A stretch of DNA of 64,000 bases from Mustelus asterias (taxonomy: Eukaryota): positions 62,001 through 126,000 of the forward strand of contig NW_027590142.1 of assembly GCF_964213995.1 (NCBI RefSeq), given 5' to 3'. Below the pieces are notes generated by a model. That model saw only the letters and a list, made by a program, of their open reading frames with translations. It ran no database searches and was not told the origin of the DNA. Numbering within the stretch: the first letter of the stretch is position 1; each line of letters begins with the position of its first letter. The translations under genes and the position numbers were made by a program. Of this stretch, positions 22,581-52,962 are shown piece after piece.

Positions 22581-23070
22581 ATGGGCATTCTTCTTGTTTT
22601 CAGCCTGTGTGTCTATTTACCCAGTGAGTACTGATCACACTAAACTACATTGTGTGGATTGAATATAAAGCTGCCCCAGTCCATCCCAATTACAGACATT
22701 GTCTGGAGTTTTAGCCCCGTTGTGTGGTTCAGCTCTGATGGGCCTTTAAACTCTCTGTGTTTAATTTCCAGGATCTTTCAGTCAGTCAGTGGTACAGAGC
22801 CCGGCAGCGGTGACCAGAAAGGAATGTCAGTCCCTCACCATCACCTGTGTTTTCTATGGTGGATTCTACGCTCGTGCTTTGGAGAGGGCGGAATTCTTCA
22901 GGCAAACACAGGCTGGGACAGAGCGGGAGCGGATCTCCGGCGGAGGGAGATTTGTTGAGTCGGTGAATAAAGCAGAAAAGACATTTTCGTTGGAAATTCG
23001 GGATGTGAGAGTTGAAGACGCCGCCACCTATTACTGTAAAGCTCATTACAAAGGAGACGGCTGGGACAGT
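22581..23070 (+). CDS. NAR-TCR V gene, already joined to D (leader 22581-22623, V-D exon 22772-23070)
   Basis: Leader MGILLVFSLCVYLP then gtgagt; IgNAR-like V lacking CDR2 (RQTQAGTERERISGGGRFVESVNKAEKTFSL), extra FR1 Cys (RKECQS); YYCKAHYKGDGWDS is followed directly by a 12-RSS. Confidence 0.9.
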
Positions 23071-23098
23071 CACAGTGAAAAGGAGCTGAGCAAATACC
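23071..23098 (+). other. 12-RSS (D-type 3' RSS)
   Basis: CACAGTG, 12 nt spacer, GCAAATACC; near-identical to the 3' RSS of the free D at 52106-52133. Confidence 0.9.
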
Positions 23099-23408
23099 TG
23101 TGCACAATTACCTTATACATTCGCAGAGCCCAGAGAGAGAATTATGGGTTGATGTTATTAGCGCTGCAATCTGGATTAATTACATTGCACTTTCCATCAC
23201 TCACATCTTTCTTTGATATTTTTCTCAGTTAATATGAAGCGACTATCTCCTACCTGGGGATATTTACTGAGAACGCGGGGCCTCAAAAAGAACAGTTTGA
23301 ACTGACAGAGACTTCAAAACATTGAATAATATTTATTGATTTAAATCCCCCGAATAATGGGAACTTCCAAATGACTGTGATGATTTCCCGTCAAGTTGAG
23401 CAGTCGGT

Positions 23409-23499
23409 AGTTCTTGTACGGGGAGACTGAGATCGGTATCAGTGTGTACGACCTGGTATGAAGCCGATGGATCAGGGACGGTGGTGACTGTCACAGCCG
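23409..23499 (+). other. NAR-TCR J segment (23447-23499) with 22-spacer RSS (23409-23446)
   Basis: AGTTCTTGT, 22 nt spacer, CAGTGTG; J reads TTWYEADGSGTVVTVTA plus G, then a gtaagt phase-1 donor. Confidence 0.9.
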
Positions 23500-23660
23500 G
23501 TAAGTTACTCCAACCCCGCCGTGTTACAAAATGTATCGTGTAACGCTCACCGTCATTTTATTATCGTGATCTGTATCGTTTCAGTCCAATTGATACGGAT
23601 AAGGATCTGTTTACAGATCCGTTACAGATTTTGATTTGGGGGCAGGACGTGATTTGGGAG

Positions 23661-23803
23661 TCACTCATCTGAAGAAGGGGCTTGCAGCTCCGAAAGCTTG
23701 TGTGGCTTTTGCTACCAAATAAACCTGTTGGACTTTAACCTGGTGTTGTTAAACTTCTTACTGTGTTTACCCCAGTCCAACGCCGGCATCTCCACATCAT
23801 GAC
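23661..23803 (+). mobile_element. Short Penelope-type terminal repeat with a hammerhead-like core
   Basis: CTGAAGA-A-GGGGC ttgca GCTCC-GAAA; related minus-strand copies at ~11870-11946 and ~19551-19641. Confidence 0.55.
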
Positions 23804-24234
23804 GGGTGTATCTAGGCAGACATCAGTGAGTTAGGCCGAATTGCCTGTTCCTCTTCTGCAGTTTCTATACAATGTAAAACTTAGAGAAAATTCCGCCCAG
23901 AGAGAGCAGAAGAGAATCAGTTAAAGAGCAAAAAAAGAATTGAAATTGTCAGAGAGCCAGAAGAGGCAGTTCCCAGTGAGTAACTGTAAAACCACTGCAG
24001 GAACTGAACAGAATAAACCCAACTGACAACTGAGAGACTTTGGGAGAACTTTCCACAATTGCAACGAACCCAAACAGCGCAAAATAAATGTTGAAACAAA
24101 ATAAAACTGACTGTAAATATTTCCAAGTAAAGAGAAAAGGAGAAAAGATGTTCCTGATAGTTAGATAGCAGAAGAAAACCAAATAGATGAATAAACAGAG
24201 ATTCCCGGGAAGTGTTAAACAGATATAAAGGAAA

Positions 24235-24577
24235 GGGCGGCACGGTAGCACAGTGGTTAGCACTGCTGCTTCACAGCTCCAGGGTCCCGGGTTCGATTCC
24301 CGGCTCGGGTCACTGTCTGTGTGGAGTTTGCACATTCTCCTCGTGTCTGTGTGGGTTTCCTCCGGGTGCTCCGGTTTCCTCCCACAGTCCAAAGATGTGC
24401 GGGTTAGGTTGATTGGCCAGGTTGAAAAATTGCCCCTTAGAGTCCTGGGATGTGTAGATTAGAGGGATTAGTGGGTAAAATATGTGGGGGTAGGGCCTGG
24501 GTGGGATTGTGGTCGGTGCAGACTCGATGGGCCGAATGGCCTCCTTCTGCACTGTAGGGTTTCTATGATTTCTATGA
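24235..24577 (+). mobile_element. Full-length HE1-family SINE
   Basis: A box (tagcacagtgg), B box (ggttcgattcc), CR1-like 3' end and (ttctatga) tail. Confidence 0.9.
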
Positions 24578-25172
24578 CATTTGAGCACCGATGTTCAACA
24601 TCATTCCATCCCCATTGGAGCTGATGAATCACAGTCATTCCCTGTTGGATCTTGCTGTGCGCTTCGACGTAGCGCAGCTGGGTTAGTCACTTGGAACGGA
24701 TTACCTCACTGATAATAAAATGTTCCCTCGTGTCTGTCTCTTAGGAAGGGAAATAGAAAGTGAAATGTAACATACATCATTGAATCCTGGAGAGCGAAAG
24801 GGTGACATTCGGCCCCTCGAGTAGATGCAGCCCTTTATAAGTGAAATCCAGTTCTTCCCCTCAGTCATGAATTTTCCCCATAACCCTGTTTTATTCCTGT
24901 TCCGGCGCTTGACTATTCCCGTGTGTTTGTCACTGTTGATTCAGCTCCCACCATCATTCTGACATTGCATTCCAGACCGTTGGATCTTGTTGTGTAAAGA
25001 AAACCTCATTTTCCACTGGTTTACAATAATAATAACAGTGAATACAGTTCCATCAGATTTAAAGTGATAATAGCACCGAATAAAACTGAGCTACTCCCGC
25101 AATTGACACATTCCCCTGGTAAACAATGACTGAAACACAGAAGAAAACGCTGTTTCTTTTTTTATCCTCCAG

Positions 25173-25478
25173 ATTCTAGTTCCCTGGTGTCGAAAAATCC
25201 GCCTCTCCAAACCTCTGCTGCTGGTGACACGGTTGCTTTAAGCTGTGAATATTCAGGGTTCTGTCAGTACACAGTACACTGGTACAGTCAGTCCGCAGGG
25301 CAGGCTCTGAAATACCTGCTTCAGACACACACTTCAGGAGAGGAGAATAAAGAAAATGCTGCCGGGGGGAGAATTTCTGCTTCTATCGATTCTGCCGAGA
25401 AAATCAGCTGGTTAAAGATCTCCAAACTGGAACTGAGCGATTCCGCTGTGTATTACTGTGCACTGAGTCGGAGCACAG
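25173..25478 (+). CDS. Leaderless NAR-TCR supporting V-delta segment
   Basis: Acceptor tcctccag; in frame with the J donor: DSSSLVSKNPP...LSCEYSGFCQYTVHWY...DSAVYYCALSRS; extra CDR1 Cys; no leader exon seen between J and this exon. Confidence 0.9.
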
Positions 25479-25655
25479 CACAGTGATACAGAACATGGAG
25501 AGAGCTGTACAAAAACCTGGACATGGTGCGTATTACAGACACAGTGATACAGAACACAGAAAGAGCTGTACAAAAAAATGAACATGGTGAAAATCACAGA
25601 CATAGTGATACAGAACACAGAGAGAGCTGTACAAAAACCTTAAAATGGTGAGGTC
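25479..25655 (+). repeat. Three tandem 61-bp units, each containing a 23-RSS
   Basis: Heptamers at 25479, 25540 and 25601; nonamers at 25509, 25570 and 25631. Confidence 0.92.
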
Positions 25656-25656
25656 T

Positions 25657-26572
25657 GCAGTGAGTAAACTGTTAGAAGGTATTCTGAGAGACAGGATCTA
25701 CAGGCATTTAGAGAGCACGGACTAATAAGGGACAGTTACCATGGCTTTGTGAGTGGAAAATCATATCTCACGAAATTGATTGAATTTTTTGAAGGAGTAA
25801 CCAAGATGGTAGATGAGGACAATGCAGTGGATGTTGTCTACATGGACTTTAACATGGGGCGGCACGGTAGCACAGTGGTTAGCACTGCTGCTTCACAGCT
25901 CCAGGGCCTGGGTTCGATTCCCGGCTCGGGTCACTGTCTGTGTGGAGTTTGCACATTCTTCCTGTGTCTGCGTGGGTTTCCTCCGGGCGCTCCGGTTTCC
26001 TCCCACAGTCCAAAGATGTGCGGGTTAGGTTAATTGGCCATGCTAAATTGCCCCTTAGTGTCCCGGGATGCGTAGATTAGCGGGTAAATATGTGGGGATA
26101 TGGGGATAGGGCCTGGGTGGGATTGTGTTCGGTGCAGACTCGAGGGGCCGAATGGCCTCTTTCTGCACTGTAGGGTTTCTATGATTTCTATGGTACCACA
26201 TGGTGCATTGCTGCATAAGGTTCAATCTCACGGGATCCACGGCGAAGTAGCCAATTGGATGCAAAATTGGCTTGATGAGAGAAGACAGGGGGTGGTTGGA
26301 AAGGGTTGTTTTTCAAACTGCAAAATGGTCCAGAGTGCATTTTTCTCACTCAGAGGCTGGTGAGTGTCTGGAAAGATCAGCCAGAGGTAGTAGTGGAGGC
26401 GGGGACAATTTTTACTTTTAAAAAGCATTTAGATACTTCCATGGGTAAGATGCGTATAGAGGGATATGGGCCAAATGCGGGCAATTGGGACTAGCTTAGT
26501 GGTAAAACCTGGATGGCATGGACAAGACGGGCCGAAGGGCCTTTTTTCAACGCTGTAAAGCTCCATGACTCG
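25657..26572 (+). mobile_element. CR1 fragments with a nested full HE1 SINE (~25857-26191)
   Basis: LTKLIEFFEGVTK...VDVVYMDF is interrupted by the gggcggcacggtagcacag SINE. Confidence 0.85.
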
Positions 26573-26859
26573 AGAGCATTAACACTCCAGTACCGCAGGA
26601 GGAAACTGTTACACTGGTACCGACTCATCCTGAATCATGCTGGAACCAGCGTCTTGGCAAATCACACAGCTAGGGCTGCAGATATGGCATTTAACTGAAT
26701 AATGGGGCAGGGGGGAGACAAGGACCTGTTGCATGAAAAATTTTTAAAAATCGAAGATGAAGGAGAAGGTTGGACTGCAGGTGAGCGAACATGAAGGCAC
26801 AGAACATGTGAACATCATATTGCACCAAAATCGTGCAAGAATGGGGAAATTTGAAAACA

Positions 26860-29731
26860 GAACAAACTTCAGGGCTTTGTATCTTTGAATGCGTGAAACA
26901 TTCTGAATAAAATTAATGAGTTAACAGCACAATGAGAGACAAATGGACATGACTTAGTAGCGATTCCTGAGGCGTGGTTGCAATGAAAACCAGATTTTGG
27001 AATTGAAGATCCAAGGGCGCTCAATACTTCAGACGGATAGACAGAAAGGAAAATGAGATGGTGGAATAATGTATATGTCCCCAAACAGTCGGTCTGTAGT
27101 TGGGCACAGGAGAAATAAGAAGATTTTGGGGGCTTGTGAGAAAGGTGTTGCAATAATTATGGATTATTTTAATATGCATATACATTGGATTTAACAAATT
27201 GGCAAGGCAAGCCCCGAGGGAGAGTTCACTGAATGCATTAGGGATTGTTTGCTGCAACAATATGTTGTGGAACCAATTAGGGAGCATTCCAATCGTGGAT
27301 TTCCACCCACTGTGGTGGACAGGGCTCTTAGCCATGTCCGACTCATCTCCAGGGCTACTGCTCTCAGCCTCTCTCCTCCCTCCCAAGACCAGGATATTGT
27401 CCCCTTTGCCTTCGCTTTTCAGCTCATCAACGTCCTCATTAAAAGAATTATCATCTGCCATGTTTGCCAACTCCAGCATGACGCCACCATTCAAGCTATC
27501 TTCCCTTCACTCTCCCTGTCAGCACTCCACAGGCACCGCTGCCTCCATGACACCCGTGTCCACTTCTTCATCACACCTAACAACTCACCTATCGCCAATG
27601 GCAATCGTAGAAGGTGCTGCACCTGCCCCTTCACTGCTACCTCCTCGGCATCCCAGGGCCCAAACATTCTTTTCAGGTGAAGCAACGCTTCATGTGCACT
27701 TCCTTTAATCTGGTCTATGGCATTCGCTGCTCCCGATGCGATCTCATCTACATTGGAGAGTCAAATGCAGACTGGTTGAACGCTTTGCAGAATACCTATG
27801 GTCAATCTGCATGCAAGACCCAGACATTTCTGTCGCTTATCGTTTGAACACACCACCCTGGTTGCCTCTCCACAGGTCATTTCTTTGTTTTGCAAAATTC
27901 CAGTGAAGCCCAACGTAAACTGGGCGAACAGCATCGCATTTTCAGATGAGGCACTTTACAGACTTCTGGACTGAGCATTGTATTCCACAAATTCAGGGCA
28001 TGACCTTTCGCCTCCACCTCCACTCCCTTTCCATTTATTTTATCTAATTTCTTCTTTTCATCATATTCGTCCATTTTTATAACTTTATTTTCTTATTTTT
28101 AGTTTTCAACTTCTAAAATCTCGTTTTCAATCCTGCTTCATCTCTCCCCCAAACCCATCCTCCCCATCCCAATGGGGACAACAGTTACATTCATATACTC
28201 TGCAATCTCTGTTTTGCCATTTATCCATCGCAATCTCTTAATGGACACTCTCAGCACCATTCTCAGCCTTTATCATCACATTTACATTCACTTTGTTGTT
28301 CTCTCTATGCCATTCGTTTCAACTACATACCGCCCCCCCCCACCCCCCCCCCCCCCCCCACCACCACCAGAAAACAAACCCATCCTCCCAGTACAAATCT
28401 TGTCCACATTTCCTTGTCTTCAACTCTGAGGAAGGGTCATCCTGACTCTAAATGTTGGCTCGATTCTCTCTCTACATATGCTATCAGACCTGCTGAGAGT
28501 TTTCAGCATTTTCTGTTTTTCTTTCAGATTCCTGCATTTGCAGTACTTTGCTATTATTATAGGGAGCAAACTGTTCTGGATTTGGTATTGTGTAATGAGC
28601 AGGGATTAATTGATGACCTCATAGTTAAGCATCCTCGAGGGAAGAGTGATCTTAGCATGATATAATTCCAAATTCAGTTTGAGGACGAGAAACTCAAGTC
28701 CCACACTAGACTTCTCGTGTTAAGCACAGGGAATTACGTAGGCATAAGGACAGAATTGGCCCGAGTGGACTGGGCAAGCAGACTGAAAGGTAAGACAGTT
28801 GATGATCAGTGGCAAATGCTGAAGGAGGCAAACAATTCCTCCCAGCTAAAATACATTGGTGAGACGAAGAAAGATTGTAAGAGGGGAAGAAACATCCATG
28901 GCTAAGCAAGGAAGTTAAAGACAGCATAAAGAGAATATCTAATGCATACCATATTGCAAGGGCAAGTGGCAGACTGGAAGATTGAGAAACTTTTAAAGAT
29001 CAACAAATGGTTACTAAAAAGTAAGAAAAAGATCAATGTTAAATTGTGAAAGAAAACTCGCACGGCGTTAAAGAAAACGTGCAGCAAAGGCATCTGTAAG
29101 AATCTAAAAGTGAGGAGTGGAGCTAAGGTGATTGCTGGACACTTGGAGTATTCCACTGGGGAGTTAACAGTGGGGAGAACAGAAAAGGTGGAAACGCTTC
29201 ATCGATATTTTGCCTCAGTTTTCACGCTGGACAACACGAGTACCATCACAATAGTAACAGATAATGCAGAGGTAATAGAAAGGAAGGGATTTCGAACAAT
29301 TATGATCAATAGGGAAAAAATGTTGATCGAACAATTGAGATTGAAGGTAGTCAAGTTCCCAGAGCCAGATGGCTAATATCTTATTGTCTTAAAGGAACCG
29401 GTAGTGGGGATAGTGGGTACATTGGTTATAATAATCCAAAATGTCTTGGATGCTTGAAATGTTCCAGTGGTTTGGAATAAATGGTAATATAATGCCCATA
29501 TTCAAAAAGAGAGGGAGGCAGAAGGTGTTAAACAAGACACCAACTAGTTTGACATCTGTCTTTGGAAAATTGTTAGAATCCGTTATTAAGATTGTAGTAA
29601 CGGGACATTTAGAATGCCACAAGGCAATTCATTAGAGTCAGCATTGTTTTACGAAGGGCAAATAATTTTGACTAATTTGCATGGAATTCTTCGAAGATGC
29701 AACAAATAAAGTGGACAATGGGGATCCTGTA
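26860..29731 (+). mobile_element. Old CR1 ORF2 (endonuclease to RT), split by a Penelope insertion and truncated at the ERV
   Basis: LNA*NILNK, REQTVLDLVLCNE and PTSLTSVFGKLLES motifs; GDPV|DV resumes after the ERV 3' LTR. Confidence 0.75.
27290..28005 (+). mobile_element. Penelope-like element fragment (GIY-YIG)
   Basis: NLVYGIRCSRCDLIYIGES; paralog of 625-1355. Confidence 0.75.
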
Positions 29732-30439
29732 TGAAGACGGGAATGGGTTAATGAACTTGTAACACTTAAACATTGAGACACGAGCTCTGTGATTTTGTGA
29801 TAAACACTGTAGAGCTTATGTTTACGTTAGGGCTCAGTGTTTTCATGTCTGTGGAATTTGTTTTCATGTATCCAAACCAGATAAGAGAGACAGCTGTCCT
29901 TGCTGTTCCCAGCTAATTGCGTATCAGGAATGTGGCTAAGCAGAATTAGCTAAGCAGACTCCATTTTATGTTCCTTTCTATTATGTACCTTTGTTTAACA
30001 CGGTGGAGCTGACATGTATACCTTCTGTCATTGTATCACAATAGATTCATATATATTCATTATATATGCTGTTCATCTGCACTATTTATACTGATATAAA
30101 GTGCTACGTAGGCACCTGTATCTTAGTTAACCTGTTTATGCAAACTTATAATGTTGTGTGATGGATAAACAACGCACAGGTGGCGACAAAACAGACATTC
30201 GCAGCCTTGAGGATGGCCACGGTTACACGGAAAAGACGGAACTTGCCGAGACAGCAATAATCGTGGGAAGATGAGGACGTGACCAGGGGCGAAAATATAT
30301 GTATAAATGTTTGCTCTTGACCTGAATTCAGTAAGAAGTCTGAGACCGTGTTAGGGAGGACCTCTTCCACAATTGTGCAAATAAACCAATGTACTTTGAC
30401 TCTAAAACTAGTCTCAGAGATATTATTTTACCTACAACA
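29732..30439 (+). repeat. ERV 5' LTR (~708 bp)
   Basis: tgaagacgggaatgg...cctacaaca; direct repeat of 39626-40332. Confidence 0.95.
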
Positions 30440-30441
30440 AT

Positions 30442-30459
30442 TGGTGCCGAAACCCGGGA
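30442..30459 (+). other. Primer-binding site, tRNA-Phe
   Basis: TGGTGCCGAAACCCGGGA is complementary to the 3' 18 nt of vertebrate tRNA-Phe. Confidence 0.9.
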
Positions 30460-31329
30460 TCTGATTACGGGTCCGGTCGAATGGCCACGACCGGGACACC
30501 GGAATAGATTACCGAACTTAATACAGTGGGTCAAAGTACAGTGGGTGATCATCTGTGATGAGAGGTTGTCTGAACTAATGAAAGATGGCTGAACTGATCA
30601 CATATGGACAAGGAGGCAATTGACTCTAACACCCAGCCTTAGATTGAATGTTAAGAGGTGAAATCTCCCACGCTGAGAGCAGGATTTGAAATGGGTGTTA
30701 GGGTCTAGAAAAAGGTTGCCTGAGGTGTGACGTTCAGACGTGAGTGAGAAAGAAACTGTCTGAGTGATCGCCGAAGTTGAAGGAAAAGCCTTCATGTGAA
30801 AGCCGGCTTAATAAAAGTATAGTATAAGTGGTGGTACGGAGGGATCTGATCACCCCTGACAGGTATCACCGAACTCGGATAAGAGCAACCTAGGAGGGGG
30901 AGAGTGAGAAAGGAGAATAGAAGACTCCAGGTGGTGAGTATAAATTTATCGATGTTATGGCGGGACAAGGACAATGGGGGGCCCCGGGGTCCCTGATAAA
31001 CGAATATATGGCTAAGAGGGACAAAGTCATTAAACAGATGAACAAAGGGGGTGGGATTTAGACCATCGACTAGACCAACAACGAAAATGGTTGAAAAAGG
31101 AAAAGAAAGACAGAAAGACGGAATAATTGAATAGGTCGCAGTCTTGGGTAAGAAATGGGCTGATGACAAAGCGAAAAGAGAATTAGAAAATAGAAACTAA
31201 TGTTTAGAGGGCCCCGGCTGGGGATCCTTGCCTCCCTATGGGCCGGTCGTAGAACCCACGGCACCAGTGGGAGACCCCGATGAGGAAGAGGTCCATGATC
31301 TCGGCCCATAACTCGGGGCGGGACATTAC

Positions 31330-31954
31330 AGAGTCCCACTGCCCGATACAAACCCTTCACCCCAGGAGAAAGACAACATGTTTTGGCATCTCTGGGAAGG
31401 CTCCATTTACATTTGCAGGATATACACCAGTTGATACGGGCCGCTTGCCCACAGGATAAGTGGAGACTGAGTTACGGAGCGGGTAACGCACCAACCAATT
31501 GGTCCAGAATTACCCATATTAAACGTTAAAGGGGTGAAGGAGCCTCCGAATTTGGGGAGCGACTCTTTCGAGTATACCATGAATGTTCGGGGATGCCCAA
31601 AACTGCCCGAACAGAGAGAGCCTTTTTAAAACATTGAAAGATGGGCTGTCGCCAGCTCACCAAAAAATCCTTAAAATGGGAGTTCTCAATACCCAGACTT
31701 ATGATGAATTAGTAGAATGGGCATCTGGAATTAGAGACGGACCAGATGAGAAACCATACCCACAAATAAAAGAGGAAAATGTTAGTGCAAACAGTGGAGG
31801 AGCTAAACCAAAGGATGCGTGCTATAACTGTGGGAAACCGGGTCACTTTGCCAGAGTCTGTGGGGTTCCAAAGGGAGGTAGAAGGAAGGACCCTGCCGGC
31901 CAGTTTTGCAATAAGTTGGGGGGGGGGGGGGTGGGTGATGCAGAGGGGCAATAA
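31330..31954 (+). pseudogene. gag: ERV gag remnant (capsid C-terminus and nucleocapsid)
   Basis: CYNCGKPGHFARVC is a CX2CX4HX4C zinc knuckle; located downstream of the PBS. Confidence 0.8.
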
Positions 31955-40406: not shown

Positions 40407-40437
<31 letters not shown>

Positions 40438-42592: not shown

Positions 42593-42631
42593 CACACTGG
42601 CATATTCCGGGCAGCAGTCTCTGCATAAACT
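42593..42631 (+). other. 23-RSS, variant
   Basis: CACACTG, 23 nt spacer, GCATAAACT. Confidence 0.75.
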
Positions 42632-43194
42632 GCAGGTTCCTCTCCCAGGCAATGGAAGGTCTCGGCATGATGTGTAGTCCCATTGTCCAATGTCGGTGTT
42701 GTAGAATTGCAGCATCAACACAGAGATGGACAGGCAAACAGATGTGAATTAGATTCTTAGACACATCAGCTGATTCAGTAACACATAAAACAGATATATG
42801 GTCACTGGACAGCTAGCAAGATAGATTGATAGACACAGGAACTGATGCATTAACACACAAGGCAGAAATATGGTCACCGGACAGTTAGATAGATGTATAG
42901 ACACACGAACGGATGAATTAACAGAAAACAAATAAATGGTCACTCGATAGTTAAATGGATAGATTCATAGACAGAGCTAGACTAACATACAAAACATATA
43001 CATGGACACGAAGACGTTAGATAGTTTGGAGCCACATCAACTGCTGGACGAGCAGGCAAAATGGATACATGGTGACTAGCTTACTTGAAACTAACTTACA
43101 GGTGATGAACATACAAATAAGCAGGAAGGCACAGTGTGATCAGCTCTGAACAACAGATGGATACACGCAGACTTTTAGACATGAAGAGAGGCTA

Positions 43195-43640
43195 CGAAGG
43201 ATGTGATTACACTAGAGAGGGTGCAGAGGAGACTCACCAGGATGTTTCCTGGGCGAGATCGTTTCAGCTATGAAGGGAGGCTGGTTCGGCTGGGGTTGTT
43301 TTCCTTAAAGCAGAGATGTGGGAGGGACCTGATTGAGGTGTACAGAATTACGAGGGATATCGATATTGTGACTAGAAAGGGACATTTCCCCTTAGTTCGG
43401 AAGTCAATAACGAGGTGACATAAATTTAAGGTAGGGGGCAGCAGATTTAGTGGGGATTTGGGGTCAAAGCACTTTCATCCAATGGGTGGTGGGAATCTGG
43501 TACTGACTGCCTGATGAGACGGCGACCCCTCACAACATTTAAGAAGCATTCAGGTGAACACTCGACACGCCGTAGCATGCAAGTCTACGGACCAAGTGCT
43601 CGGAAATTCGACTAGAATAGCTGGGTGTTTGGTGATCCTC
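43195..43640 (+). mobile_element. Old CR1 3' fragment
   Basis: LERVQRRLTRMFPG...LGLFSL. Confidence 0.7.
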
Positions 43641-44419
43641 AACCACAGTTCTTGCCTGCAGATTGGAATGTCGCCTTTCGTATCCAGTGGACAGCGGCCA
43701 GTGGCAATGTCGGCCAAGGATTTGCGTCGCCTTGACTTTCCCCAGTACAATGCCCATGGATTGAAAACAGGATTCTGTGTGTGTGTGTGTGTGTGTGTGT
43801 GCCTGTGTGTGTTAGTATGTGTCTGTGTGCGCGGCGCAGTGAGTTCTGTCAATTATTTGTCACAATCATCATGACCATTGACATTGTAATTGATGCCGCT
43901 CCCCGCTGCTGCTGTGGATAAATTTAAATCCAAGCTAAGCACAGCTGCTGATCGTTCCGCACAGGTGGATATGAGGCACCTCAGTGACCCTTTTTTCAAT
44001 GTGGATTGTAACACAAACAGGTTATTTACCAGGCTTGGGTAGGATTGGATTAATGAACGTTGTGTCAGTCCATCGGCCATCTCGGCCTCTGCACACAGTA
44101 CAACTGGAACCAATGTGTGTGAGGTCCTCAGCACAAGGACAAGAGTCATTTTGTTTTCACGAAGACTGTTGCACTTAGTCCCTTAGCATATTGCTGGCGT
44201 GATCCGACTGAGTGCCACTATTGCTGAGGGGAAGCGGCGAATCTCGAGGTGCTAGAGACAGGAATCAAATTTGCTGCATAAATGAACATTTGTAACATTG
44301 AAATGATTCAAGTCTTGGCACTTGCTGCTAATAGAGAAGGCACCATTATTAATGGTTCTAAAGATTGTTATTTATTGCAAGTTCTGGTATTGTTCTTGCA
44401 AGAATACTATTGTTGTTGC

Positions 44420-44800
44420 AAAGGGTCATTGGTGTCCTCCCACACCAGTTACTGAAAGCAAGAATGCAGCGTCAGCAAGTAGTTAGAAAGGCATATGCTA
44501 TGTTGGCCTTCATTGCAAGGATGTATTCATACAGCTGTATCGGGCCTTGGAGAAACCATACCTGGAGTATTGCATGCAGTTTGGTCTCCTTATCTAATAA
44601 AGGATATACATACCATAGAGGGATTGCAGCAATGGTTGACCAGACTGGTTCCTGGGAGAGAACGATTGTCATATGAGGAAGTGATTGAGTCTACTGGGCC
44701 TATGTTCACTGAAATTTAGATGAATGAAAGGGCATCTCACGGAAACGTATAAAAGTCTAAAAGAGCTGGACAGCCTGATGCAGGGATGTTGTATTCCCTC
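44420..44800 (+). mobile_element. Old CR1 RT fragment
   Basis: QQVVRKAYAMLAFIAR and WSPYLIKDI. Confidence 0.65.
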
Positions 44801-45131
44801 TGAAACGATTATTAATAACCCACAAGTGCATAGAACCAATGATCGTGTCTTCAACACACACACACATCTGTGACACAGATTGGTGAGTAAAGGATCTTTT
44901 CAGTCTGCGATATTCGATGGTGATTCCTGCCCTTTTATGCAAACTTTACAACATGCATGAAATCCATTCCATTTCTCCTCCTTTTCTTGGCCATGGCCAA
45001 CAATGTTAATCAGTCTATTGGAGGATTCCATATGCAGAGTGGCTTGACAATTCTCCCAATGCCTCGTGTGTGTGTGTGTGTTTGTGTTTTCCACTGTGCC
45101 TCAACTCAGTGGTGTTAAACCGGCAGGAGTC

Positions 45132-45430
45132 ATCATAGAATCCCTACAGTGCAGAAGTCTGCACCCAGATCCACAACCCGCCCTTTCCCCTAACTTCGCC
45201 AATCAAACAATCTAAACGTCTTGGGACACTAAGGAGTAATTGAGCATGGCCAATCCACCAAAACTTCAGACATGTTTGGACTATGGGAGGGAACCGGAGC
45301 ACCGAGAGGAAACTTACACACACACGGGGAGACCGTGCAAACTCCATATAGTCAGCCAAGGCTGGAATCGAAACCTGTTCTGTCGTGTAATGCGGCAGCA
45401 GTGTCAACCAATGTGCTACCGTGTCGCCCT
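45132..45430 (-). mobile_element. HE1-family SINE, degenerate
   Basis: Reverse complement begins gggcgacacggtagcaca; body ggtgctccggttccctccca. Confidence 0.7.
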
Positions 45431-45463
45431 TCACCATGACTGATGTCTCTCTAACTTTAACAG

Positions 45464-45752
45464 ATGTCAAGTTGGAAGTATCGCTGACGCAGTCAGAGGC
45501 AGAGATGGGGCTCCCAGGGTAGTTCCTGCCCCTAGCCTCCAAAACCAGTTGCTTCGACTTCAGTGGCCAGTGGCCATATTAGAACCAGAAGAGTACCGGG
45601 AAGAGGCAGGACCAGCTAAATATCCAACAGTGAGGAGTCTGAAGGAAGAGTCACTGCTTCCAATGACCTTACACACAATATATTTGCTTTCGATGTCAGG
45701 AGGGTGACAATGGAGGACACCCTGCTTATGTCAGTGCACAGCTAACACAGTG
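45464..45752 (+). pseudogene. IgH-like V pseudogene
   Basis: DVKLEVSLTQSEAEMGLPG*...KTSCFDFSG...EGRVTASNDLTHNIFAFDV...EDT; heptamer CACAGTG at 45746-45752; no good nonamer. Confidence 0.7.
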
Positions 45753-46100
45753 AGGCTAAAGCAACATGAAATCGGTCACCTAGTGAAACAATATTCCAAA
45801 TGGTAATGTTAACGGGAACATCAGGAATAGGGTTCAATTCATCGTGAGTAACAGTGAGTCTGTGCAGACTTAATTAACAATGAAGATTTGTTGACGCCCA
45901 TTCTGTATTAAGGTGGGTGTCATCATGTGATGACAGCGTCTTCCATTCCAGGCAGCCAATAGTCGTTGTCTTGTCAAGGCCTTCCCCCGCCCATTGCACA
46001 AATCCTTGTGACTGACGATCAGAATCTAACGATCAGCTTAGTACGTTGTTCAGTGAGTGACTGGACGTTCTGTCGGGGTGTCTAATTTAACACAGGCTCC

Positions 46101-46576
46101 ATGAGCATGATGCTAGCGATATTTCTCTGTGTGTTCCTTGTCATCTTATCTTGTGAGTAGTTGGATATTATCAGAAAATTTGCACAGTTTCTGTTTGACA
46201 TCAATCATTCCCTGTGCAGTGACACAAACTGGATTCACCTCACCATAATTATTGTTTCTTCCCTTTAGCAGGCGTCCAGTCGGATGTGGTGTTGACCCAG
46301 CCAGAGGCAGAAACGGGGGTAGTAGGGCAATCCCTGACCCTAACCTGTAAAACCAGCGGATTTGATATTGGGAGCTTCATCATGCTCTGGTACCGGCACA
46401 GTCCTGAGACGGGACTGGGATGGCTGCTTTGGTACAATAATGAAAATAGCAAGGATTACAATCAGGAGCTTGGTGGACGATTCATTGCATCCAAGGACCT
46501 TTCCAACAACGTATTCGATCTCTCTGTCAGCACGTTAACAATAGCAGACAGCGCGACGTATTACTGTGCACAGCAG
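46101..46576 (+). CDS. Intact IgH-like V gene inside the TCR V array (leader 46101-46152, V exon 46272-46576)
   Basis: Leader MSMMLAIFLCVFLVILS then gtgagt; VQSDVVLTQPEAETG...LTCKTSGFD...GRFIASKDLSNNVF...YYCAQQ matches shark IgM/IgW VH framework motifs. Confidence 0.9.
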
Positions 46577-46615
46577 CACAGTGATATAGATCACATCCAG
46601 ACTTGTACAAAAACC
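46577..46615 (+). other. Consensus 23-RSS
   Basis: CACAGTG, 23 nt spacer, ACAAAAACC. Confidence 0.95.
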
Positions 46616-47854
46616 CACAAGAGGAATTGCAGCCATTTCCCTGCTTTTCTTTCCATTCATGGGATGCCCACGCTTAATTTTCCATGAATTGAATGGTTTC
46701 TTAGGTCATTTCAAATGGTGCTTGAGAGTCAACCGCATTGTTGCGTGGATATGCCGTCACATGTAAGCAAGATCAAGTAAGGAAGGCAGATTTCCTTCCA
46801 TAAAACGACATTCGTGAATCAGATTATTCTTCACGACAATCGACAATGGTTTCATGGTCATCATTAGATCTTTGCTTTCAGATTTTTATTGAATTCAAAT
46901 TTCAGCATCTGCCTTTGTGGGATTCAAGCCCCATTTGCACAGTAATTATTCCATTGCTCTAAGGTTCTTATGTGGAACTTGCTACCACAGGGAGTAACTA
47001 AGGCAAATCGCACAGATGCATTTAAGGGGAATCTAGTTAAGCATACGAGGGAGAGGGAAACCTAAAAATATATTGATCGGATTGGATGAAGAACATTGGA
47101 GGAAAGGTCATCCGCGGCAATAATATCAGTACGTTGGAACGACCGAATGACCGGCATCTGTGTGTCGACTCTATGAGTCGATGTTTCTGTTGCATTGATG
47201 AGTGCGTTCTGTTCATTGTGCCACCAGAGAGCATTGGGAGAGCAATGGCATTGAGAGCATTGACAAGCAAATAGATTAGCTACCGTTTTTTCTTCCACTA
47301 TTGAGCAAAGGTATACACGCGAGACGAATGAAACAACCGAGAAGCGCGACTGACTCTTCCTGATCCAGTCTGACAGAATTACACAGAGCTGTTGGTGAAG
47401 GACACTCACGCGGAGTTCAGGCCAGATAGCTGATCATTGAATGTGGATGCACCCTGTGAATCTTGACCAGGACCAGAATAGACGAAAGAAAAGCAAGTTT
47501 CTTCTGAAACTGAGGAATTCGAAAGGTTATTCCTTACTGCTAAACATGCGGATTATGTATTGAAACGTTTCTGATTGTCAGACGCAATGTGACAATGTGT
47601 GCTCTTCACTAATACTAAGTAACTGAAAGCAGCAGATTATTTCGATGGCTATTGAGATAATCATTGTCGCAGTGTGAACTTAGGTTCGCTCACAATAGTG
47701 GGTCCATGCGCATCCTTTTAGCCACATGCTTAATGTTAATTTCACATGGCGCATATTTCATGCACGGTTGTTTCAAACATAAAAACTGCGCAAATACCTG
47801 CTCACAAAGCTGTTTTGATTTGCCCAGGATGGAACAATACAACAAAACTTGCAA

Positions 47855-48340
47855 ACATTGCTTCCTTCATACCATCAAATGGTTAGAAGTGGGGATCTCT
47901 GCTTATGACTGCACAATGCTTAGCATCATTCGCAACTCCTCAGATGCCGACGCACTCTATGTCCAAATGCAACAAGACCTGGACAATATCCAGGCTTGAG
48001 CTTACAGGTCACAACAAAACATTTAAGCTGCACAAGTGCCAAGCAATGACCATCTCCAACAAGAAAGAGTCGAACAGTCGCCCTTAAAAATTCAACCACA
48101 TTACCATTACTGAATCTCATTCAACATTCCCCTCCAAGCTTCTCACCATCCTGGCTTGGAAATGTATCACCATTCCTTCATTGTGGCTGAGTCAAAATCA
48201 TGGGACTCCCTCCCTCGCATCACGGTGGGTGTAATTACACCACATGGACTGCAATGGTTCAAGTTGGTACTTCACCGCCACCTTGGACAATAAATGCTTC
48301 GCGACCCAGTAACACGCACAAACCTATAAGTAAACAATAA
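47855..48340 (+). mobile_element. Old LINE RT/3' fragment (CR1/L2-like)
   Basis: QMQQDLDNIQA and HKCQAMTISNK. Confidence 0.55.
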
Positions 48341-48709
48341 AAAGTTGGAACATGAAATTCTTTGCAAATGAATCTCTCATACCCTCCACCTTATCTCAGA
48401 TTTTGTACTTTATTTTCTTCCCGCTTTGCCCATTCAGTTGCTCAAAGCCTATTAGATTTCTAACTCTCCTGATGCAAGGTCACAGTCAAAAACTGGGAAC
48501 TCTCTTTCTATCTCCAAACTGTTGTCTGACCTGCTAAATATTCCCAATATTTTCTGCTTCGATTTCAGATTTGGTCGTGCACACCAGATTCATAGAATCA
48601 CTAAAGTGCAGAAGCAGTTATGAGGCCCATGAAATCTGTATCGACTCTCTCACAGAATATCCCTTGCCATCCCACGCAACCCAACGCATTTCCAACGCAG
48701 GTTGTAGCG

Positions 48710-49480
48710 AAAGGTCAACTTAATATGAGTTAGGTCCATTCAAAGGTCTGACAGCAGCAAGGAAGAAGCTGCTTTTGAGACGGTTGATACGTAACCTCAG
48801 ACTTTTGCATCTCTTCTCGACGGAAGAAGGTGGAAGAGAATATGCCCTGGGTGCGTGTGGTCCTTGATCATGCTGGCTGCTTTGCCGAGGCAGTGGGAAG
48901 TGTAGACAGAGTCAAAGGATGGGAGGCTGGTTCGCGTGATGAACTGGGCTTCGTTTACGATCGTTTGTAGTTTCTTGTGATCTTGGACAGAGCAGGAGCA
49001 AGCCGTGATAGAGCCATAAAGGATACTTTCTATGGTGCACCTCTAAAGGTTGGTAAGAGTCGCAGCGGACATGCCGAATTTCCTTAGCCTCTTGCGAAAG
49101 TGAAGGCGTTGGTGGGCTTTTTTTTAACTACAGCCTCGGCGTGGAGGGATAGGACGGGTTGTTGGTGATCCGGACACCGAGAAACCTGAAGCTCTTGAGT
49201 ATTTCCACTTCATCCCGTTGATGTAGACAAGGGCGTGTCTTCCACCACGCTTCCTGAAGTCGATGACTAGGTCATTTGTTCTTTTGACACTGAGGGAGAG
49301 ATTATTAGCATCGCATCAATTCACCAAATTCTCTCTATCTTTCCTGTGCTCTGTCTAATCATTGTCTGAGATCCGCCCTACTACAGTGGCGTCTCAGCAA
49401 AGTTGCAAATCGAGCTTGAGGGGAATTTGGCCACAGAATCTTAGGTGTATGAGGAGTAAAGTAAGGGGCTGAGGACACAG
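48710..49480 (-). mobile_element. Rex1-type LINE fragment, degenerate
   Basis: Colinear with 3920-4700. Confidence 0.75.
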
Positions 49481-51668
49481 ACTCGTGTCGAGAATAATGA
49501 ACACCTTGAATATATTCCATTCTCAACGAAAGTCATCACTCAGGAAGCAGCCAACACCCATCCATGTCTCACCCTTCAGAGCAAAGCTCTGTAAGGATAA
49601 CATCCTGCAATTATGTGTGGAGTCTGGAGAAACTGAGCTGACACAGAATATTCGCCATCCAAATTCGTATTTATATGGAATACCCAAGGAGAGATAATTG
49701 CATTGGCAGGAAGGCAGGTGTCAAAATCACGCAGATTTAAATGATTTGCACTCGTTTCTGGTTGTTCAGGAGCCATTTAGTTAGAGTGGGGGAGCCGGTT
49801 CGTTAGTGATTTTCAAAGGGGAGTACGTTCAGTATTTACAATGTCAACATTGTAAATATTATGTGTCAATTGCAGGGAGGTGGAAACATGTCGAAAAGGG
49901 GTTGAGTGATGGAATCTTCCATCCTGGTAGAACAGAAGGTTTATAGGAAGAACATCACTTTGGACTTCTTCTCCATGTCTGATCTCATCCTGACCTAACA
50001 ACATGTGTCCGCTCATTGATGGTTGTGGGTTTTCAATACTGGGATATGGGCAGTTGATAGGCCACTGGTATTGACACTAGATTAGCGACTCAGGGACCCA
50101 GGTTACTAAGTCGGGCGGGTACCCAAGTTCAAATCCGAACAAGGCAGATGATGAAATTTGAAGTAAATAAAAAAACCATTGAGACCATTGTCGATTGTTG
50201 TCAAAACCCATCTTGTTTACTAATGCCCTTTTAGGGAAGGAAATGAGCCTAAATGTGACTCCAGAAACACAGCAATATGGTTGGCTCTTAAAGGTTTCTG
50301 GTCAATGGATTCCCCCAGGATTTTTCAGCTATGAAAGAAGCATTTAGATGACCACCTGACACGCCTTATATACAAGGTTATGGACCAAGAGCTGGAAGAT
50401 GTGATTGGAATGGATACATGTTTGATGGCTAGCACAGACAAGACGGGCTGAAGGTCTGGAGAAGTTTATGACTCTTTGACTAACTCGACAGCTCCCCTTT
50501 CAAATCAGCCATGGGACATTAAACGCCCAACAGACAAGGCAGGCTGTTTGATACCTCGTCTAAACATTGATGAGTGACATTGCAGAACTTCCTCAACACA
50601 AACAGAAAATGCTAGAAAATCTCACAGCTCTGACAGCATCTGTGGGGAGCGAATAGTGCACACGTTTCGAGTCTAGATGACCTTTCGCTAGCTCTGACGA
50701 AGGGTTCTCTAGACTCGAAGCAAAAACAGAAAATTCTGGAAAATCCCAGCAGGACTGACAGCATCTGTGAAGAGAAAATGGAGTCAAGGTTTTGAGGCTG
50801 GATAACATAGAACCAAGCTTACTTGGTCTGACTCCAGATGCACAGCAAGGCTTGCCATCTGGAATGATCTAACAACTCTCCGGTTTCCTCCTACAGTCCG
50901 AAACATGTGCTGGTTAGGTGCATTGACCATGCTAAATTGTCCCTCAGTGTACCCGAACAGGTGCCAGGGTGTGGCGACGAGGGGATTGTCACAGTAACTT
51001 CACTGCAGTGTCAATGTAAGCCCAGCTGTTGCACTAATTAATAAACTTTAAACAATCCATTCAATTCAGGGCAATTAGGGATGTGAGCGAAGTCCTCACC
51101 CCTTGAGATAATAAATAAAACCAAAACCGATTCACCTACTTCTCATCAAATCCTTCGATGGATGCCCTTCTCACCGTCTCTGGAATCGTCTCCAACCTGT
51201 GTTCTTTTTCAATCTGTTGTTTCTATAGTTTTTGCCTTTTGAAAGTGCCCCTAATTCTTTTCGCCCCTCAATCCGCAACTATGCCTTCAATTGCCTTGTT
51301 CCTGAGCTGGGGAATTCTCTAGGTTAATTCCTCACCGCCCCGCCTGCCCGCCCCCCCCCCCACCCCTCCCCCAATCCCCCCCTCCCTCATCCCCGCCCAC
51401 TTTTCCACCTCAGCTTCCTTACCTCCGTTCCTTTAAAAATTTTCCTGAAAAATTACCCCAACCGCAGAACATCCTGCTGGTTATCTAACCCCTACAGGTG
51501 CGTTGTGCCAAATATGTTTAGCCAGTGCTCATGTGAAATCACATGGACGGTTTTAATCGGGTGCGTTGCTTCATGGGAGTAGAATTGATAGTTGCATCAA
51601 TCAGCGACATTCTGCTGTCGCAGCTGAAATGATACATGCGACAACAGTAGCAGCAACAGCTGCTGAAG

Positions 51669-51734
51669 AGTTTTTGTGCTGGCATGTATCACTGTGCACA
51701 GTGATGGGCCTCGGCTTCCCATCATACTAAAACT
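51669..51734. other. Precise RSS signal joint (12-RSS fused heptamer-to-heptamer with a 22-RSS)
   Basis: AGTTTTTGT, 12 nt, CACTGTG | CACAGTG, 22 nt, ACTAAAACT. Confidence 0.92.
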
Positions 51735-52060
51735 CTCACTGAAGATTTTCACATAAACAAATGAAAAAGCGGAGTTAATCTTCCCTGAAACCCGCACAGT
51801 TCCATCGCACACCGTCAATCCCACAGTCACGTTTATAATGAGGATTTGATTATTACCGTTAACATTCTGAGTGTTTTAAACAAGGAGTGTGTGCGGAAGC
51901 TGACATCTTTCCCGGGTTAGGTGTTGATGAATGAAGAATGGAAATGACTGATCCCAGTTACAAACCCAAACAAAAGATGGGATCATCGTCTCTCAGCTGG
52001 AACTGGGAACCGCAGTCCCCGCTGTTTAATTAATTTCCCTACATCTCACACAGTATCTGG

Positions 52061-52133
52061 GGTTTTGATGCTAAATTATAACACTGTGTAAATGGTTAGG
52101 AGAGTCACAGTGAAAAGAAGCTGAGCAAATACC
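52061..52133 (+). other. Unrearranged NAR-TCR D segment (52089-52105, taaatggttaggagagt) with 12/12 RSS
   Basis: GGTTTTGAT, 12 nt, CACTGTG, D, CACAGTG, 12 nt, GCAAATACC. Confidence 0.9.
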
Positions 52134-52480
52134 TGTGCACAATTACAATATACATTCGCAGGGCCCAGAGAGAGAATTATGGATTGATGTTATTAGCGCT
52201 GCAATCTGGATTAATTACATTGCACTTTCCATCACTCACATCTTTCTTTGATATTTTTCTCAGTTAATATGAAGCGACTATCTCCTCCCTGGGGATATTT
52301 ACTGAGAACGCGGGGCCTCAAAAAGAACAGTTTGAACCGACAGAGACTTCAAAACATTGAATAATATTTATTGATTTAAATCCCCCGAATAATTGGGAAC
52401 TTCCAAATGACTGTGATGATTTCCCGTCAAGTTGAGTAGTCGGTAGTTCTTGTACGGGGAGACTGAGATCGGTATCACTG
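52106..52480 (+). repeat. Direct near-identical copy of the D-J intervening DNA at 23071-23444, ending in a truncated J 22-RSS; J is absent
   Basis: Colinear with few substitutions and one indel; nonamer 52445-52453, 22 nt spacer, CACTG, then inverted V. Confidence 0.92.
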
Positions 52481-52962
52481 GCCGTCTCCTTTGTAATGAG
52501 CTTTACAGAAATAGGTGGCGGTGTCTTCAACTCTCACATCCCGAATTTCCAACGAAAATTTCTTTTCTGCTTTATTCACCGACACAACAAATCTCCCTCC
52601 GCCGGAGATCCACTCCCGCTCCGTTCCGGTCTGTGTTTGTTTGAAGAATTCCGCCCTCTCCAAAGCACGAGCGTAGAATCCACCATAGAAAACACAGGTG
52701 ATGGTGAGGGACTGACATTCCTTCCTGGTCACCGCTGCCGGGCTCTGTACCACTGACTGACTGAAAGATCCTGGAAATTAAACACAAGAGAGTTTAAAGG
52801 ATCATCAGAGCTGAACCACACAACGGGGCTAAAACCCCAGACAGTGTCTGTAATTGGGATGGACTGGGGCAGCTTTATATTCAATCCACACAATGTAGTT
52901 TAGTGTGATCAGTACCCACTGGGTAAATAGACACACAGGCTGAAAACGAGAAGAATTCCCAT
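52481..52962 (-). pseudogene. Second NAR-TCR V(D) copy, inverted; ORF open but RSS heptamer broken (leader 52962-52920, exon 52770-52481)
   Basis: Near-identical to 22581-23061 (YFCKAHYKGDG); adjacent heptamer reads GCCAGTG and lacks the essential CAC. Confidence 0.85.

What the first reader, a model, noticed from the sequence alone, without database searches (positions are those of the whole stretch)
22581..52962. Three RAG scars together suggest germline V(D)J recombination rebuilt the NAR-TCR locus
Seen: a coding joint, a signal joint and a hybrid joint all involve the same NAR-TCR cassette family within 30 kb. Region 51697-52480 is a complete 22RSS-12D12-22RSS interior stripped of V and J and reversed relative to the adjacent V. 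Model (inference): (1) the minus-strand V joined a D by inversion, flipping its own D-J interior and leaving the signal joint; (2) the joined V-D was copied to the 22.6 kb cassette; (3) a hybrid-joint deletion removed the remaining middle. Caveat: the 12-RSS in the signal joint and its flank do not resemble the 5' RSS of the free D, so its donor is unidentified.
Basis: inference. Interest (0 to 1): 0.9.

Follow-up and report, generated by a model that had tools for sequence, protein, structure and literature searches.

The report
Germline RAG scars in shark NAR-TCR locus
A shark T-cell-receptor region carries, written into the assembled chromosome, three kinds of junction that the antibody-gene cutting enzyme RAG normally makes only in immune cells, which would be direct evidence that this enzyme has reshaped the locus in the germ line, although public reads from other animals could not confirm two of the three junctions.

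Summary
All three junctions exist in the assembly at the stated places. (1) At 22.6 kb there is an intact NAR-TCR cassette whose V is fused to the last 9 nt of a D; the D 3' 12-RSS, the J 22-RSS and J are intact. (2) At 51696|51697 a 12-RSS and a 22-RSS are fused exactly, heptamer to heptamer. (3) At 52480|52481 a J-type 22-RSS that lacks 2 heptamer letters is fused to the coding end of an inverted V. Homology between the two cassettes (96-97%) breaks at these RSS borders.

RAG-type recombination fixed in the genome is the best reading. It also conflicts with the non-homologous 12-RSS donor. A history of two 12/23-legal deletions around an in-situ plus-strand cassette, next to an inverted VD-joined paralogue, fits at least as well.

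Contigs of four public runs showed unrearranged paralogues and the left flank, which ended exactly at the heptamer border in two samples. No listed contig bridged the signal or hybrid joint. Germline fixation is therefore unproven.

Germline RAG joints are known in shark Ig genes. Here they sit in a TCR locus, and a signal joint is retained. The same scan noted similar events elsewhere in this genome; those notes are unchecked.

The parts
22581..22623 (+). Leader exon of cassette A (ATG at 22581, GT donor follows)
22772..23061 (+). NAR-TCR V exon of cassette A. The last 3 letters (23059-23061) lie beyond the V end seen in unrearranged copies and are probably D-derived.
   Evidence: Pfam V-set; 78% identical to the NAR V part of a basking-shark predicted protein; homology end; V ends in unrearranged copies
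23062..23070 (+). D-derived 9 letters of the germline V-D coding joint (7 of 9 match the 3' end of the free D)
23071..23098 (+). Intact D 3' 12-RSS of cassette A
23409..23446 (-). J 22-RSS of cassette A
23447..23499 (+). J segment of cassette A with GT splice donor
25173..25478 (+). Leaderless supporting V-delta exon of cassette A, followed by three tandem 23-RSS-like units (25479-25639)
   Evidence: (85% to the supporting V part of the basking-shark protein)
51669..51696 (-). 12-RSS of an unidentified donor ('X'), the left half of the signal joint
   Evidence: flank unique in the window
51697..51734 (+). V-type 22-RSS, the right half of the signal joint
   Evidence: in public contigs the same RSS is joined directly to a V end
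51735..52060 (+). V-D intervening sequence; the only copy in the window
52061..52088 (-). D 5' 12-RSS
52089..52105 (+). Free 17-nt D segment
52106..52133 (+). D 3' 12-RSS
52445..52480 (-). J-type 22-RSS with only 5 of 7 heptamer letters left; the signal side of the hybrid joint
52481..52770 (-). Inverted NAR-TCR V exon (cassette B) with an open frame; its end carries the same 3 extra letters as cassette A
52920..52962 (-). Leader exon of the inverted V (ATG at 52962, donor intact)

Best explanation
The window is part of a shark TCR-delta locus with NAR-TCR cassettes. It holds fossil products of the V(D)J recombinase (RAG1/RAG2 plus end joining) that are written into the assembled chromosome rather than made in a lymphocyte.

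Shown: there is a V-D coding joint in cassette A, an exact 12/22 signal joint, and a J-signal-end to V-coding-end hybrid joint. All three lie at RSS borders.

Inferred, preferred history (model T):
1. An ancestral cassette joined V to D by ordinary deletion and was then duplicated in inverted orientation. This gave A (22.6 kb, plus strand) and B0 (52.5 kb, minus strand). That is why both Vs end in the same 3 extra letters.
2. A separate unrearranged plus-strand cassette C lay between an upstream 12-RSS element X and B0.
3. X (12) recombined with the V-RSS of C (22). Because the two heptamers faced the DNA between them, X's coding part and V of C left on a circle and the signal joint stayed on the chromosome.
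4. The J-RSS of C (22) recombined with the D 3' 12-RSS of B0 in the hybrid mode. This deleted J of C, the supporting Vs and J of B0. It trimmed 9 letters from the V-D end and 2 from the heptamer.

Every step obeys the 12/23 rule and none needs an inversion.

Consequences: the 52 kb structure is a dead relic, because the V lacks the CAC of a usable heptamer. Cassette A remains a one-step (VD to J) rearranging gene.
For: - The palindromic heptamer fusion occurs once against 0.01 expected, with correctly spaced nonamers on both sides.
- Homology between A and B switches from inverted to direct within 3 letters of the V-D joint in A and within the heptamer remnant in B.
- The signal joint is exact and the hybrid joint is nibbled. 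This matches the passages on RAG products in PMC2193153.
- The A/B differences are 28 substitutions plus 4 gap positions in 835 columns, and 9 substitutions plus 1 gap in 379. By my count on the list, 17 of the 28 are transitions. The copies are therefore real diverged paralogues, not read noise.
- Five public contigs in 3 of 4 runs join a V end directly to position 51697. These V ends map to 52484, 52488 (two contigs), 52493 and 52494. None of the five reaches 52481, so the shared 3 letters are not V-encoded in any unrearranged copy seen.
- Models R, D and T all reproduce the observed order. R and T are 12/23-legal.
- X's RSS and flank have no relative in the window. T tolerates this and R does not.
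- A basking-shark predicted protein holds NAR V, CDR3, J and supporting V in one model. This hints that joined NAR-TCR genes exist in other shark assemblies.
Against: - No listed contig from four public runs bridges either the signal joint or the hybrid joint.
- I checked 24 listed variant positions that have a cassette-A counterpart. At 16 of them the runs read A's letter. At 9 of those 16, the best run (X17) has no depth at all for the window's B letter. B-specific sequence is thus largely unseen in three samples of the closest organism.
- In X19 and X20 the contig that is identical to the left flank stops exactly at 51696, and the V-RSS contigs run on into a V. This suggests those animals lack the signal joint.
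- Model T needs a third cassette whose V and J have left no trace.
- The '3 shared letters' argument rests on alignment ends of short contigs. It would fail if the A/B ancestor's V was simply 3 letters longer.
- The best run holds only 0.54 of the sampled words, so the assembly's own reads were apparently not among the runs.
- Contigs can drop variants, so absence is weak evidence.
Confidence: 0.55

Rival explanations
1. The minus-strand V joined the coding segment behind the 12-RSS by inversion. This flipped its own D-J interior and left the signal joint. The joined V-D was copied to 22.6 kb. A hybrid-joint deletion between the new D 3' 12-RSS and the J-RSS then removed J and the rest.
For: The model is topologically correct and 12/23-legal. 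It explains the shared V end with only two RAG events plus a duplication. The interior and V_B show similar private divergence from the public contigs.
Against: Cassette A's D 3' RSS and flank are 97.4% identical to the free D's, so the donor would have to be a NAR-TCR D paralogue. Its 5' RSS shares only 12 of 21 non-heptamer letters with the free D's 5' RSS (my count). Its flank of about 600 nt has no similarity to the V-D intervening region or to anything else in the window. No V lies upstream of it.
Confidence: 0.18
2. Model D. A and B are inverted duplicates of an unrearranged cassette. In B, the V-RSS and the J-RSS recombined in the hybrid mode and inverted the interior. The V-RSS then formed a signal joint with X by deletion. 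A joined V to D independently.
For: The model reproduces the order and needs no third cassette. Read-through ORFs of related V genes show that long V 3' ends, 5-7 codons past the Cys, are natural in this family.
Against: One step pairs two 22-spacer RSSs, against the 12/23 rule. It also needs the same 3 extra letters at two independent joints, about 1 in 64 if they were random additions. The alternative is a longer germline V, which was seen in 0 of 5 unrearranged junctions.
Confidence: 0.07
3. The signal and hybrid joints are not inherited features of the species. Either they belong to one rare haplotype or to somatic (lymphocyte) DNA of the sequenced animal, or they are mis-joins of the assembler between real paralogous pieces.
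For: No listed contig in four runs bridges either joint. B-specific letters are mostly unseen. The left-flank contigs of two samples stop exactly at the heptamer border. The source reads were not available.
Against: An assembler has no reason to join pieces exactly heptamer to heptamer. A clonal somatic allele would be far below consensus depth in ordinary tissue (inference). The B copy differs from A by 3-4% with a substitution-dominated pattern, so it is a real locus that must lie somewhere. Contig data cannot show absence (the tool's own caveat).
Confidence: 0.17
4. Ordinary (non-RAG) breakage and end joining, or recombination between the short inverted heptamer repeats, produced the rearrangements. 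On this view the RSS borders are coincidental.
For: The V-RSS and the J-RSS are inverted repeats sharing heptamer-plus-2 letters. These could support a microhomology-mediated inversion.
Against: Three separate breakpoints each lie within 0-2 letters of a heptamer border. One is an exact 12/22 fusion that is expected 0.01 times by chance.
Confidence: 0.03

Closest known systems
Germline-joined (VD, VDD, VDJ, VJ) immunoglobulin genes of cartilaginous fish, attributed to RAG activity in germ cells (Lee et al. 2000, PMC2193156, passages read; commentary PMC2193153, passages read)
   Same: There is a coding joint in the genome with the RSS pair and the intervening DNA gone. A partially joined VD with a remaining RSS is the type reported for shark IgH.
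   Different: This one lies in a TCR-delta/NAR-TCR cassette, not an Ig cluster. [quoted passage not shown]
Germline hybrid-joint inversion between D1 and D2 of a horned-shark IgH cluster (cited in PMC2193153 as its reference 9; the original paper is not held)
   Same: A signal end is joined to a partner's coding end and fixed in the genome. It is read as site-specific RAG action.
   Different: Here only one of the two reciprocal hybrid joints is present. In the preferred model it arose by deletion, not inversion. The heptamer lost 2 letters.
Chromosomally retained signal joints of inversional or 'divergent-RSS' V(D)J recombination in lymphocytes (for example kappa-locus inversions, PMC2118803, abstract seen in the listing)
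   Same: There is an exact heptamer-to-heptamer fusion of a 12- and a 22/23-spacer RSS that stays on the chromosome.
   Different: Those are somatic. PMC2193153 lists a germline signal-joint route only as a hypothesis (its Fig. 2B ii) and says that only routes i and iii have evidence from sharks.
Doubly rearranging NAR-TCR genes of sharks (Criscitiello et al. 2006; paper not held; described in passages of PMC12227049 and PMC5931798)
   Same: The cassette has a leader, a NAR-type V, its own D and J, a J splice donor, and then a leaderless supporting V-delta with its own 23-RSS.
   Different: In cassette A the first rearrangement is half done in the genome. Whether the published nurse-shark genes include such copies I could not check.

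Membership tests
RAG signal joint | Exact heptamer-to-heptamer fusion of two RSSs | tested here: met
   51690-51703: 1 hit with 0 mismatches, 0.01 expected
RAG signal joint | One partner has a 12-spacer and the other a 23(+/-1)-spacer, each with a nonamer | tested here: met
   Spacer 12 with nonamer 8/9; spacer 22 with nonamer 7/9
RAG coding joint (germline-joined V-D) | V and D are fused with small loss or addition. V-RSS, intervening DNA and D 5' RSS are absent. The D 3' RSS is intact. | tested here: met
   The missing piece is present in the paralogous copy at 51697-52088.
RAG hybrid joint | The signal end of one RSS is joined to the coding end that belonged to the partner RSS, with possible nibbling | tested here: met
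   J-type RSS (5/7 heptamer) abuts the V coding end at 52480|52481. Which partner RSS was used is inferred, not seen.
RAG hybrid joint | The partner RSSs obey the 12/23 rule | tested here: inconclusive
   Legal in models R and T, violated in model D. The partner RSS is no longer present.
Germline (inherited) rearrangement | The same joint is present in non-lymphoid DNA and in several individuals | tested here: inconclusive
   Four runs were laid. No listed piece bridges either 52 kb joint. B-specific letters are mostly unseen. Contigs cannot prove absence.
Germline (inherited) rearrangement | RAG1/RAG2 are expressed in germ cells | not testable with these tools
   No RAG gene lies in the window. 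PMC2193156 says the point was unsettled in 2000.
NAR-TCR cassette | A leader plus a NAR-type V-set domain, its own D and J, and a J splice donor leading to a leaderless supporting V-delta with an extra Cys | tested here: met
   V-set. 71/91 and 84/99 identity to the two V parts of Cetorhinus XP_078393577.1. J and donor. The 'NAR-TCR' name for that protein's architecture is my reading; the source calls it uncharacterized.

The most novel reading that the evidence does not exclude
The signal joint may be a segregating allele made by RAG in the germ line. The window's haplotype would carry the rearranged form. Other animals of the closest organism would still carry the 12-RSS attached to its own coding segment. 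That would explain why contigs identical to the left flank stop exactly at the heptamer border in two samples, while their V-RSS is still attached to a V. If so, germline V(D)J recombination in sharks is recent or ongoing. It could then be studied as ordinary structural polymorphism, with the reciprocal product (a signal joint) as proof that the recombinase made the joined genes, rather than reverse transcription or gene conversion.
Probability: 0.25. Interest if true: 0.85.

Novelty: new variant of a known kind. Interest (0 to 1): 0.6.

Why it matters
Joined antibody genes in sharks have long been taken as indirect evidence that RAG acts in germ cells and has reshaped antigen-receptor loci.

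A coding joint alone can also be explained by retro-copying or gene conversion from a rearranged template. A signal joint and a hybrid joint cannot be explained that way. They are by-products of the cut-and-join reaction itself.

Finding them in a chromosome, next to a VD-joined gene of the same family, would give a near-complete set of reaction products. It would extend the phenomenon from Ig clusters to a T-cell-receptor locus. It would also give concrete breakpoints for testing, in other individuals and species, how often and how recently this happens.

Cassette A also shows how a doubly rearranging receptor can be simplified to need one joining step fewer.

Tried and rejected
- Transposition of the RSS-ended interior. 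Rejected because there is no target-site duplication: the letters on the two outer sides of 51697-52480 differ.
- Re-integration of a V-to-D excision circle. Rejected because the left flank of the 12-RSS would then be V-D intervening sequence, and it has no similarity to it.
- The 12-RSS as the 3' RSS of a minus-strand D. Rejected for the same reason: there is no similarity to D-J intervening sequence.
- A single 30-kb inversion joining the V of one cassette to the D of the other. It does not give the observed order without a further 22x22 step (worked out by hand; not among the models).
- Read noise as the source of the A/B differences. Rejected because the differences are substitution-dominated.
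Only their read-through ORFs were used.
- Literature. Seven full-text searches found no paper describing a germline signal joint or a germline-joined NAR-TCR gene. Criscitiello 2006, Ott 2021 and Kokubu 1988 are not held. Supplementary files were not opened, so such a report may exist there.
It was corrected.
- I did not lay reads on the 22.6 kb joint, and I did not test RAG expression.


Full report
**What the window is.** The 64 kb holds several V-set exons followed by 23-spacer RSSs.

At 22.6-25.5 kb there is a complete NAR-TCR-type cassette on the plus strand:
- a leader (22581-22623);
- a V exon (from 22772);
- a 12-RSS (23071-23098);
- a 22-RSS (23409-23446) in front of a J (23447-23499) that ends in a GT donor;
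- 1.7 kb further on, a leaderless V exon (25173-25478) with an extra Cys and its own 23-RSS.

The V exon is 78% identical (71/91) to the first V domain of a 235-aa predicted basking-shark protein. The leaderless V is 85% identical (84/99) to the second V domain of the same protein. The source calls that protein uncharacterized; reading it as NAR-TCR is my inference. The best protein match to the V exon was 83%, so the species of the window is not in that collection. I do not know which shark it is.

*Signal joint.* The heptamer-heptamer palindrome occurs once, at 51690-51703, against 0.01 expected. A good nonamer lies 12 letters to its left and another lies 22 letters to its right.

*Stripped interior.* To the right of the joint follow 326 nt of unique sequence, then a 17-nt D between two 12-RSSs, then about 310 nt, and then a J-type 22-RSS (52445-52480).

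*Hybrid joint.* That J-type RSS has only the last 5 letters of its heptamer. It is fused at 52480|52481 to the 3' end of a V that reads on the minus strand. This V has an intact leader, intact splice sites and an open frame.

*Coding joint.* In cassette A the V runs straight into 9 letters that match 7 of 9 with the 3' end of the free D. The D's 3' 12-RSS follows.

*Self-comparison.* A and B are inverted relative to each other over promoter, leader and V: 22231-23061 versus 53315-52481, 96.2%. They are direct over the stretch from the D 3' end to the J-RSS: 23064-23441 versus 52099-52477, 97.4%. Homology therefore switches orientation within 3 letters of the V-D joint in A. In B it stops inside the heptamer remnant. 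Three independent breakpoints within 0-2 letters of a heptamer border are not what random breakage gives.

**Are the copies real?** A and B differ at 32 of 835 aligned columns in the V region (28 substitutions, 4 gap positions) and at 10 of 379 in the interior. By my count 17 of the 28 substitutions are transitions. In the V exon there are 12 differences in 288 nt: 3 in synonymous codon changes and 9 in non-synonymous ones. This is the pattern of diverged paralogues, not of sequencing noise or a recent assembly duplication.

**Evidence from public reads.** The best four belong to one coded organism (G; three samples, one study) and hold 0.37-0.54 of the sampled words. The reads used for the assembly were therefore evidently not among them.

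I laid X17, X19 and X20 (organism G, one run per sample) and X1 (organism A, share 0.11) on 51060-53330 at 85% likeness. All four are contigs, not raw reads.

Results in favour of the reading:
- Five contigs in 3 of the 4 runs join position 51697, the first letter of the V-type RSS, directly to a V end on the opposite strand. The V ends map to 52484 (X20), 52488 (X19 and X1), 52493 (X1) and 52494 (X1).
- These are unrearranged relatives. They show that this RSS is a genuine V-RSS.
- In none of the five does the V reach 52481. The last 3 letters shared by A and B lie beyond every germline V end seen.

Results against the reading, or neutral:
- Of the 32 pieces listed (2592 more were not shown), none bridges 51696/51697 or 52480/52481.
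- The interior appears only with 13-16 differences per 340-400 nt, and attached to a V.
- I could compare 24 listed variant positions with cassette A. At 16 of them the runs read A's letter. At 9 of those 16, run X17 has no depth at all for the window's letter.
- The left flank is matched perfectly: X17 at 51060-51280 and 51377-51678, X19 at 51378-51696, X20 at 51515-51696.
- In X19 and X20 the perfect contig ends exactly at 51696, the last letter of the 12-RSS heptamer.
- Together with V-RSS contigs that run uninterrupted into a V, this suggests those two animals do not carry the signal joint. It also suggests that their 12-RSS continues into something else.
- The tool warns that contigs show presence, not absence, and that paralogous variants can be dropped. 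I therefore treat this as unresolved rather than as a refutation.

**How it most likely arose.** I wrote the candidate histories as symbolic operations and checked that each gives the observed order of parts (one search had a bug in one step).

It works and is 12/23-legal.

*Model D:* hybrid-mode inversion between the V-RSS and the J-RSS, then a deletion that leaves the signal joint. It works but pairs two 22-spacer RSSs.

*Model T (mine):* no inversion at all.
- The interior is what is left of a plus-strand cassette in its original orientation.
- On its left, the upstream 12-RSS element and the cassette's V-RSS had heptamers that faced the DNA between them. Recombination removed that DNA, including the cassette's V, as a circle and left the signal joint on the chromosome.
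- On its right, the cassette's J-RSS recombined in the hybrid mode with the D 3' 12-RSS of a neighbouring inverted cassette that was already VD-joined. This deleted everything between them.
- Both steps are 12/23-legal.

**Choosing between the models.**

*Against R.* R makes cassette A a copy of 'V joined to the donor of the 12-RSS'. A's D 3' RSS and 370-nt flank are 97.4% identical to those of the free D. The donor would then be a close D paralogue, and its 5' side should resemble the free D's 5' side. It does not: 12 of 21 letters agree outside the heptamer, and about 600 nt of flank have no match in the window. I think it is a real inconsistency of step 2.

*Against D.* D needs a 12/23 violation. 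It also needs the same 3 extra letters to arise at two independent joints.

*For and against T.* T explains the shared V end as one old V-D joint that was then duplicated. It tolerates an unrelated donor and it obeys the rule. Its cost is a third cassette whose V and J are gone.

*Weights.* I put about 0.3 on T specifically and about 0.18 on R. I put 0.55 on the broader statement that these are inherited RAG products made in some order.

*Shown versus inferred.* The anatomy and the breakpoints are shown. The order of events, the identity of the lost partner RSS and germline inheritance are inferred.

**Comparison with what is known.**
- Passages of Lewis and Wu 2000 (PMC2193153) state that signal joints are exact fusions and that hybrid joints show base loss and addition.
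- The same paper says germline coding joints and one germline hybrid-joint inversion in a shark IgH cluster are documented. It proposes a germline signal-joint route only as a hypothesis.
- Lee et al. 2000 (PMC2193156, passages) showed germline-joined light-chain genes in several nurse sharks. They left open whether RAG is present in germ cells.
- My seven full-text searches found nothing on a germline signal joint or a joined NAR-TCR gene. The key NAR-TCR papers are not in the library, and supplements were closed.
- The kind of event is therefore known. New are the locus, the retained signal joint and the co-occurrence of all three product types.
- The scan's first-stage notes list further RAG-type events in other NAR-TCR cassettes of this genome. 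I did not check them and they do not count as support.

**Verdict.** The general interpretation, germline RAG activity, is the best explanation but is not proven to be inherited or fixed. The specific three-step inversion story is not needed and is partly contradicted.

I score interest at 0.6. A specialist would find a chromosomal signal joint next to a hybrid joint and a VD-joined TCR gene notable and worth validating. The underlying phenomenon is established for shark Ig genes, and the read evidence here is equivocal.

Noticed in passing
window 25479-25639: Three tandem RSS-like units with a 61-nt period lie behind the supporting V-delta. The first two have perfect heptamers with 23-nt spacers. 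The third has one heptamer change.
   Followed up: partly
window 51288-51439: A C-rich low-complexity stretch in the left flank collects word depths of 4000-11000 in all four public runs and many loose ends. It is a genome-wide repeat that breaks contigs just left of the 12-RSS flank.
   Followed up: no
P0007 (Cetorhinus maximus XP_078393577.1): A genome-predicted 235-aa protein contains leader, NAR-type V, a full CDR3, J and supporting V in one model. This suggests a fully joined NAR-TCR VDJ in the basking-shark assembly, or a model built on rearranged transcripts.
   Followed up: partly
window 10100-10527 (minus strand) and 7300-7686 (plus strand): Two TCR-alpha/delta-type V segments with 23-RSSs lie in opposite orientation. 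The minus-strand one needs two reading frames and is probably a pseudogene. Inverted Vs would rearrange by inversion and leave signal joints on the chromosome.
   Followed up: no
window 46286-46615: An intact V-set exon with a perfect 23-RSS (heptamer 7/7, nonamer 9/9) lies 5 kb upstream of the orphan 12-RSS, in the same orientation. It is a conceivable former partner of that 12-RSS element.
   Followed up: no
window 24233-24576, 25857-26192, 45223-45431, 50878-51055 and others: There are many copies of a tRNA-like SINE. A reverse-transcriptase ORF of a LINE lies at about 55960-57351 on the minus strand. The locus is riddled with retroelements.
   Followed up: no
window 51128-51336 in run X20: A low-depth contig differs from the window at 4 of 209 positions, while another sample matches the same flank perfectly. 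This hints at roughly 2% haplotype divergence in this region.
   Followed up: no
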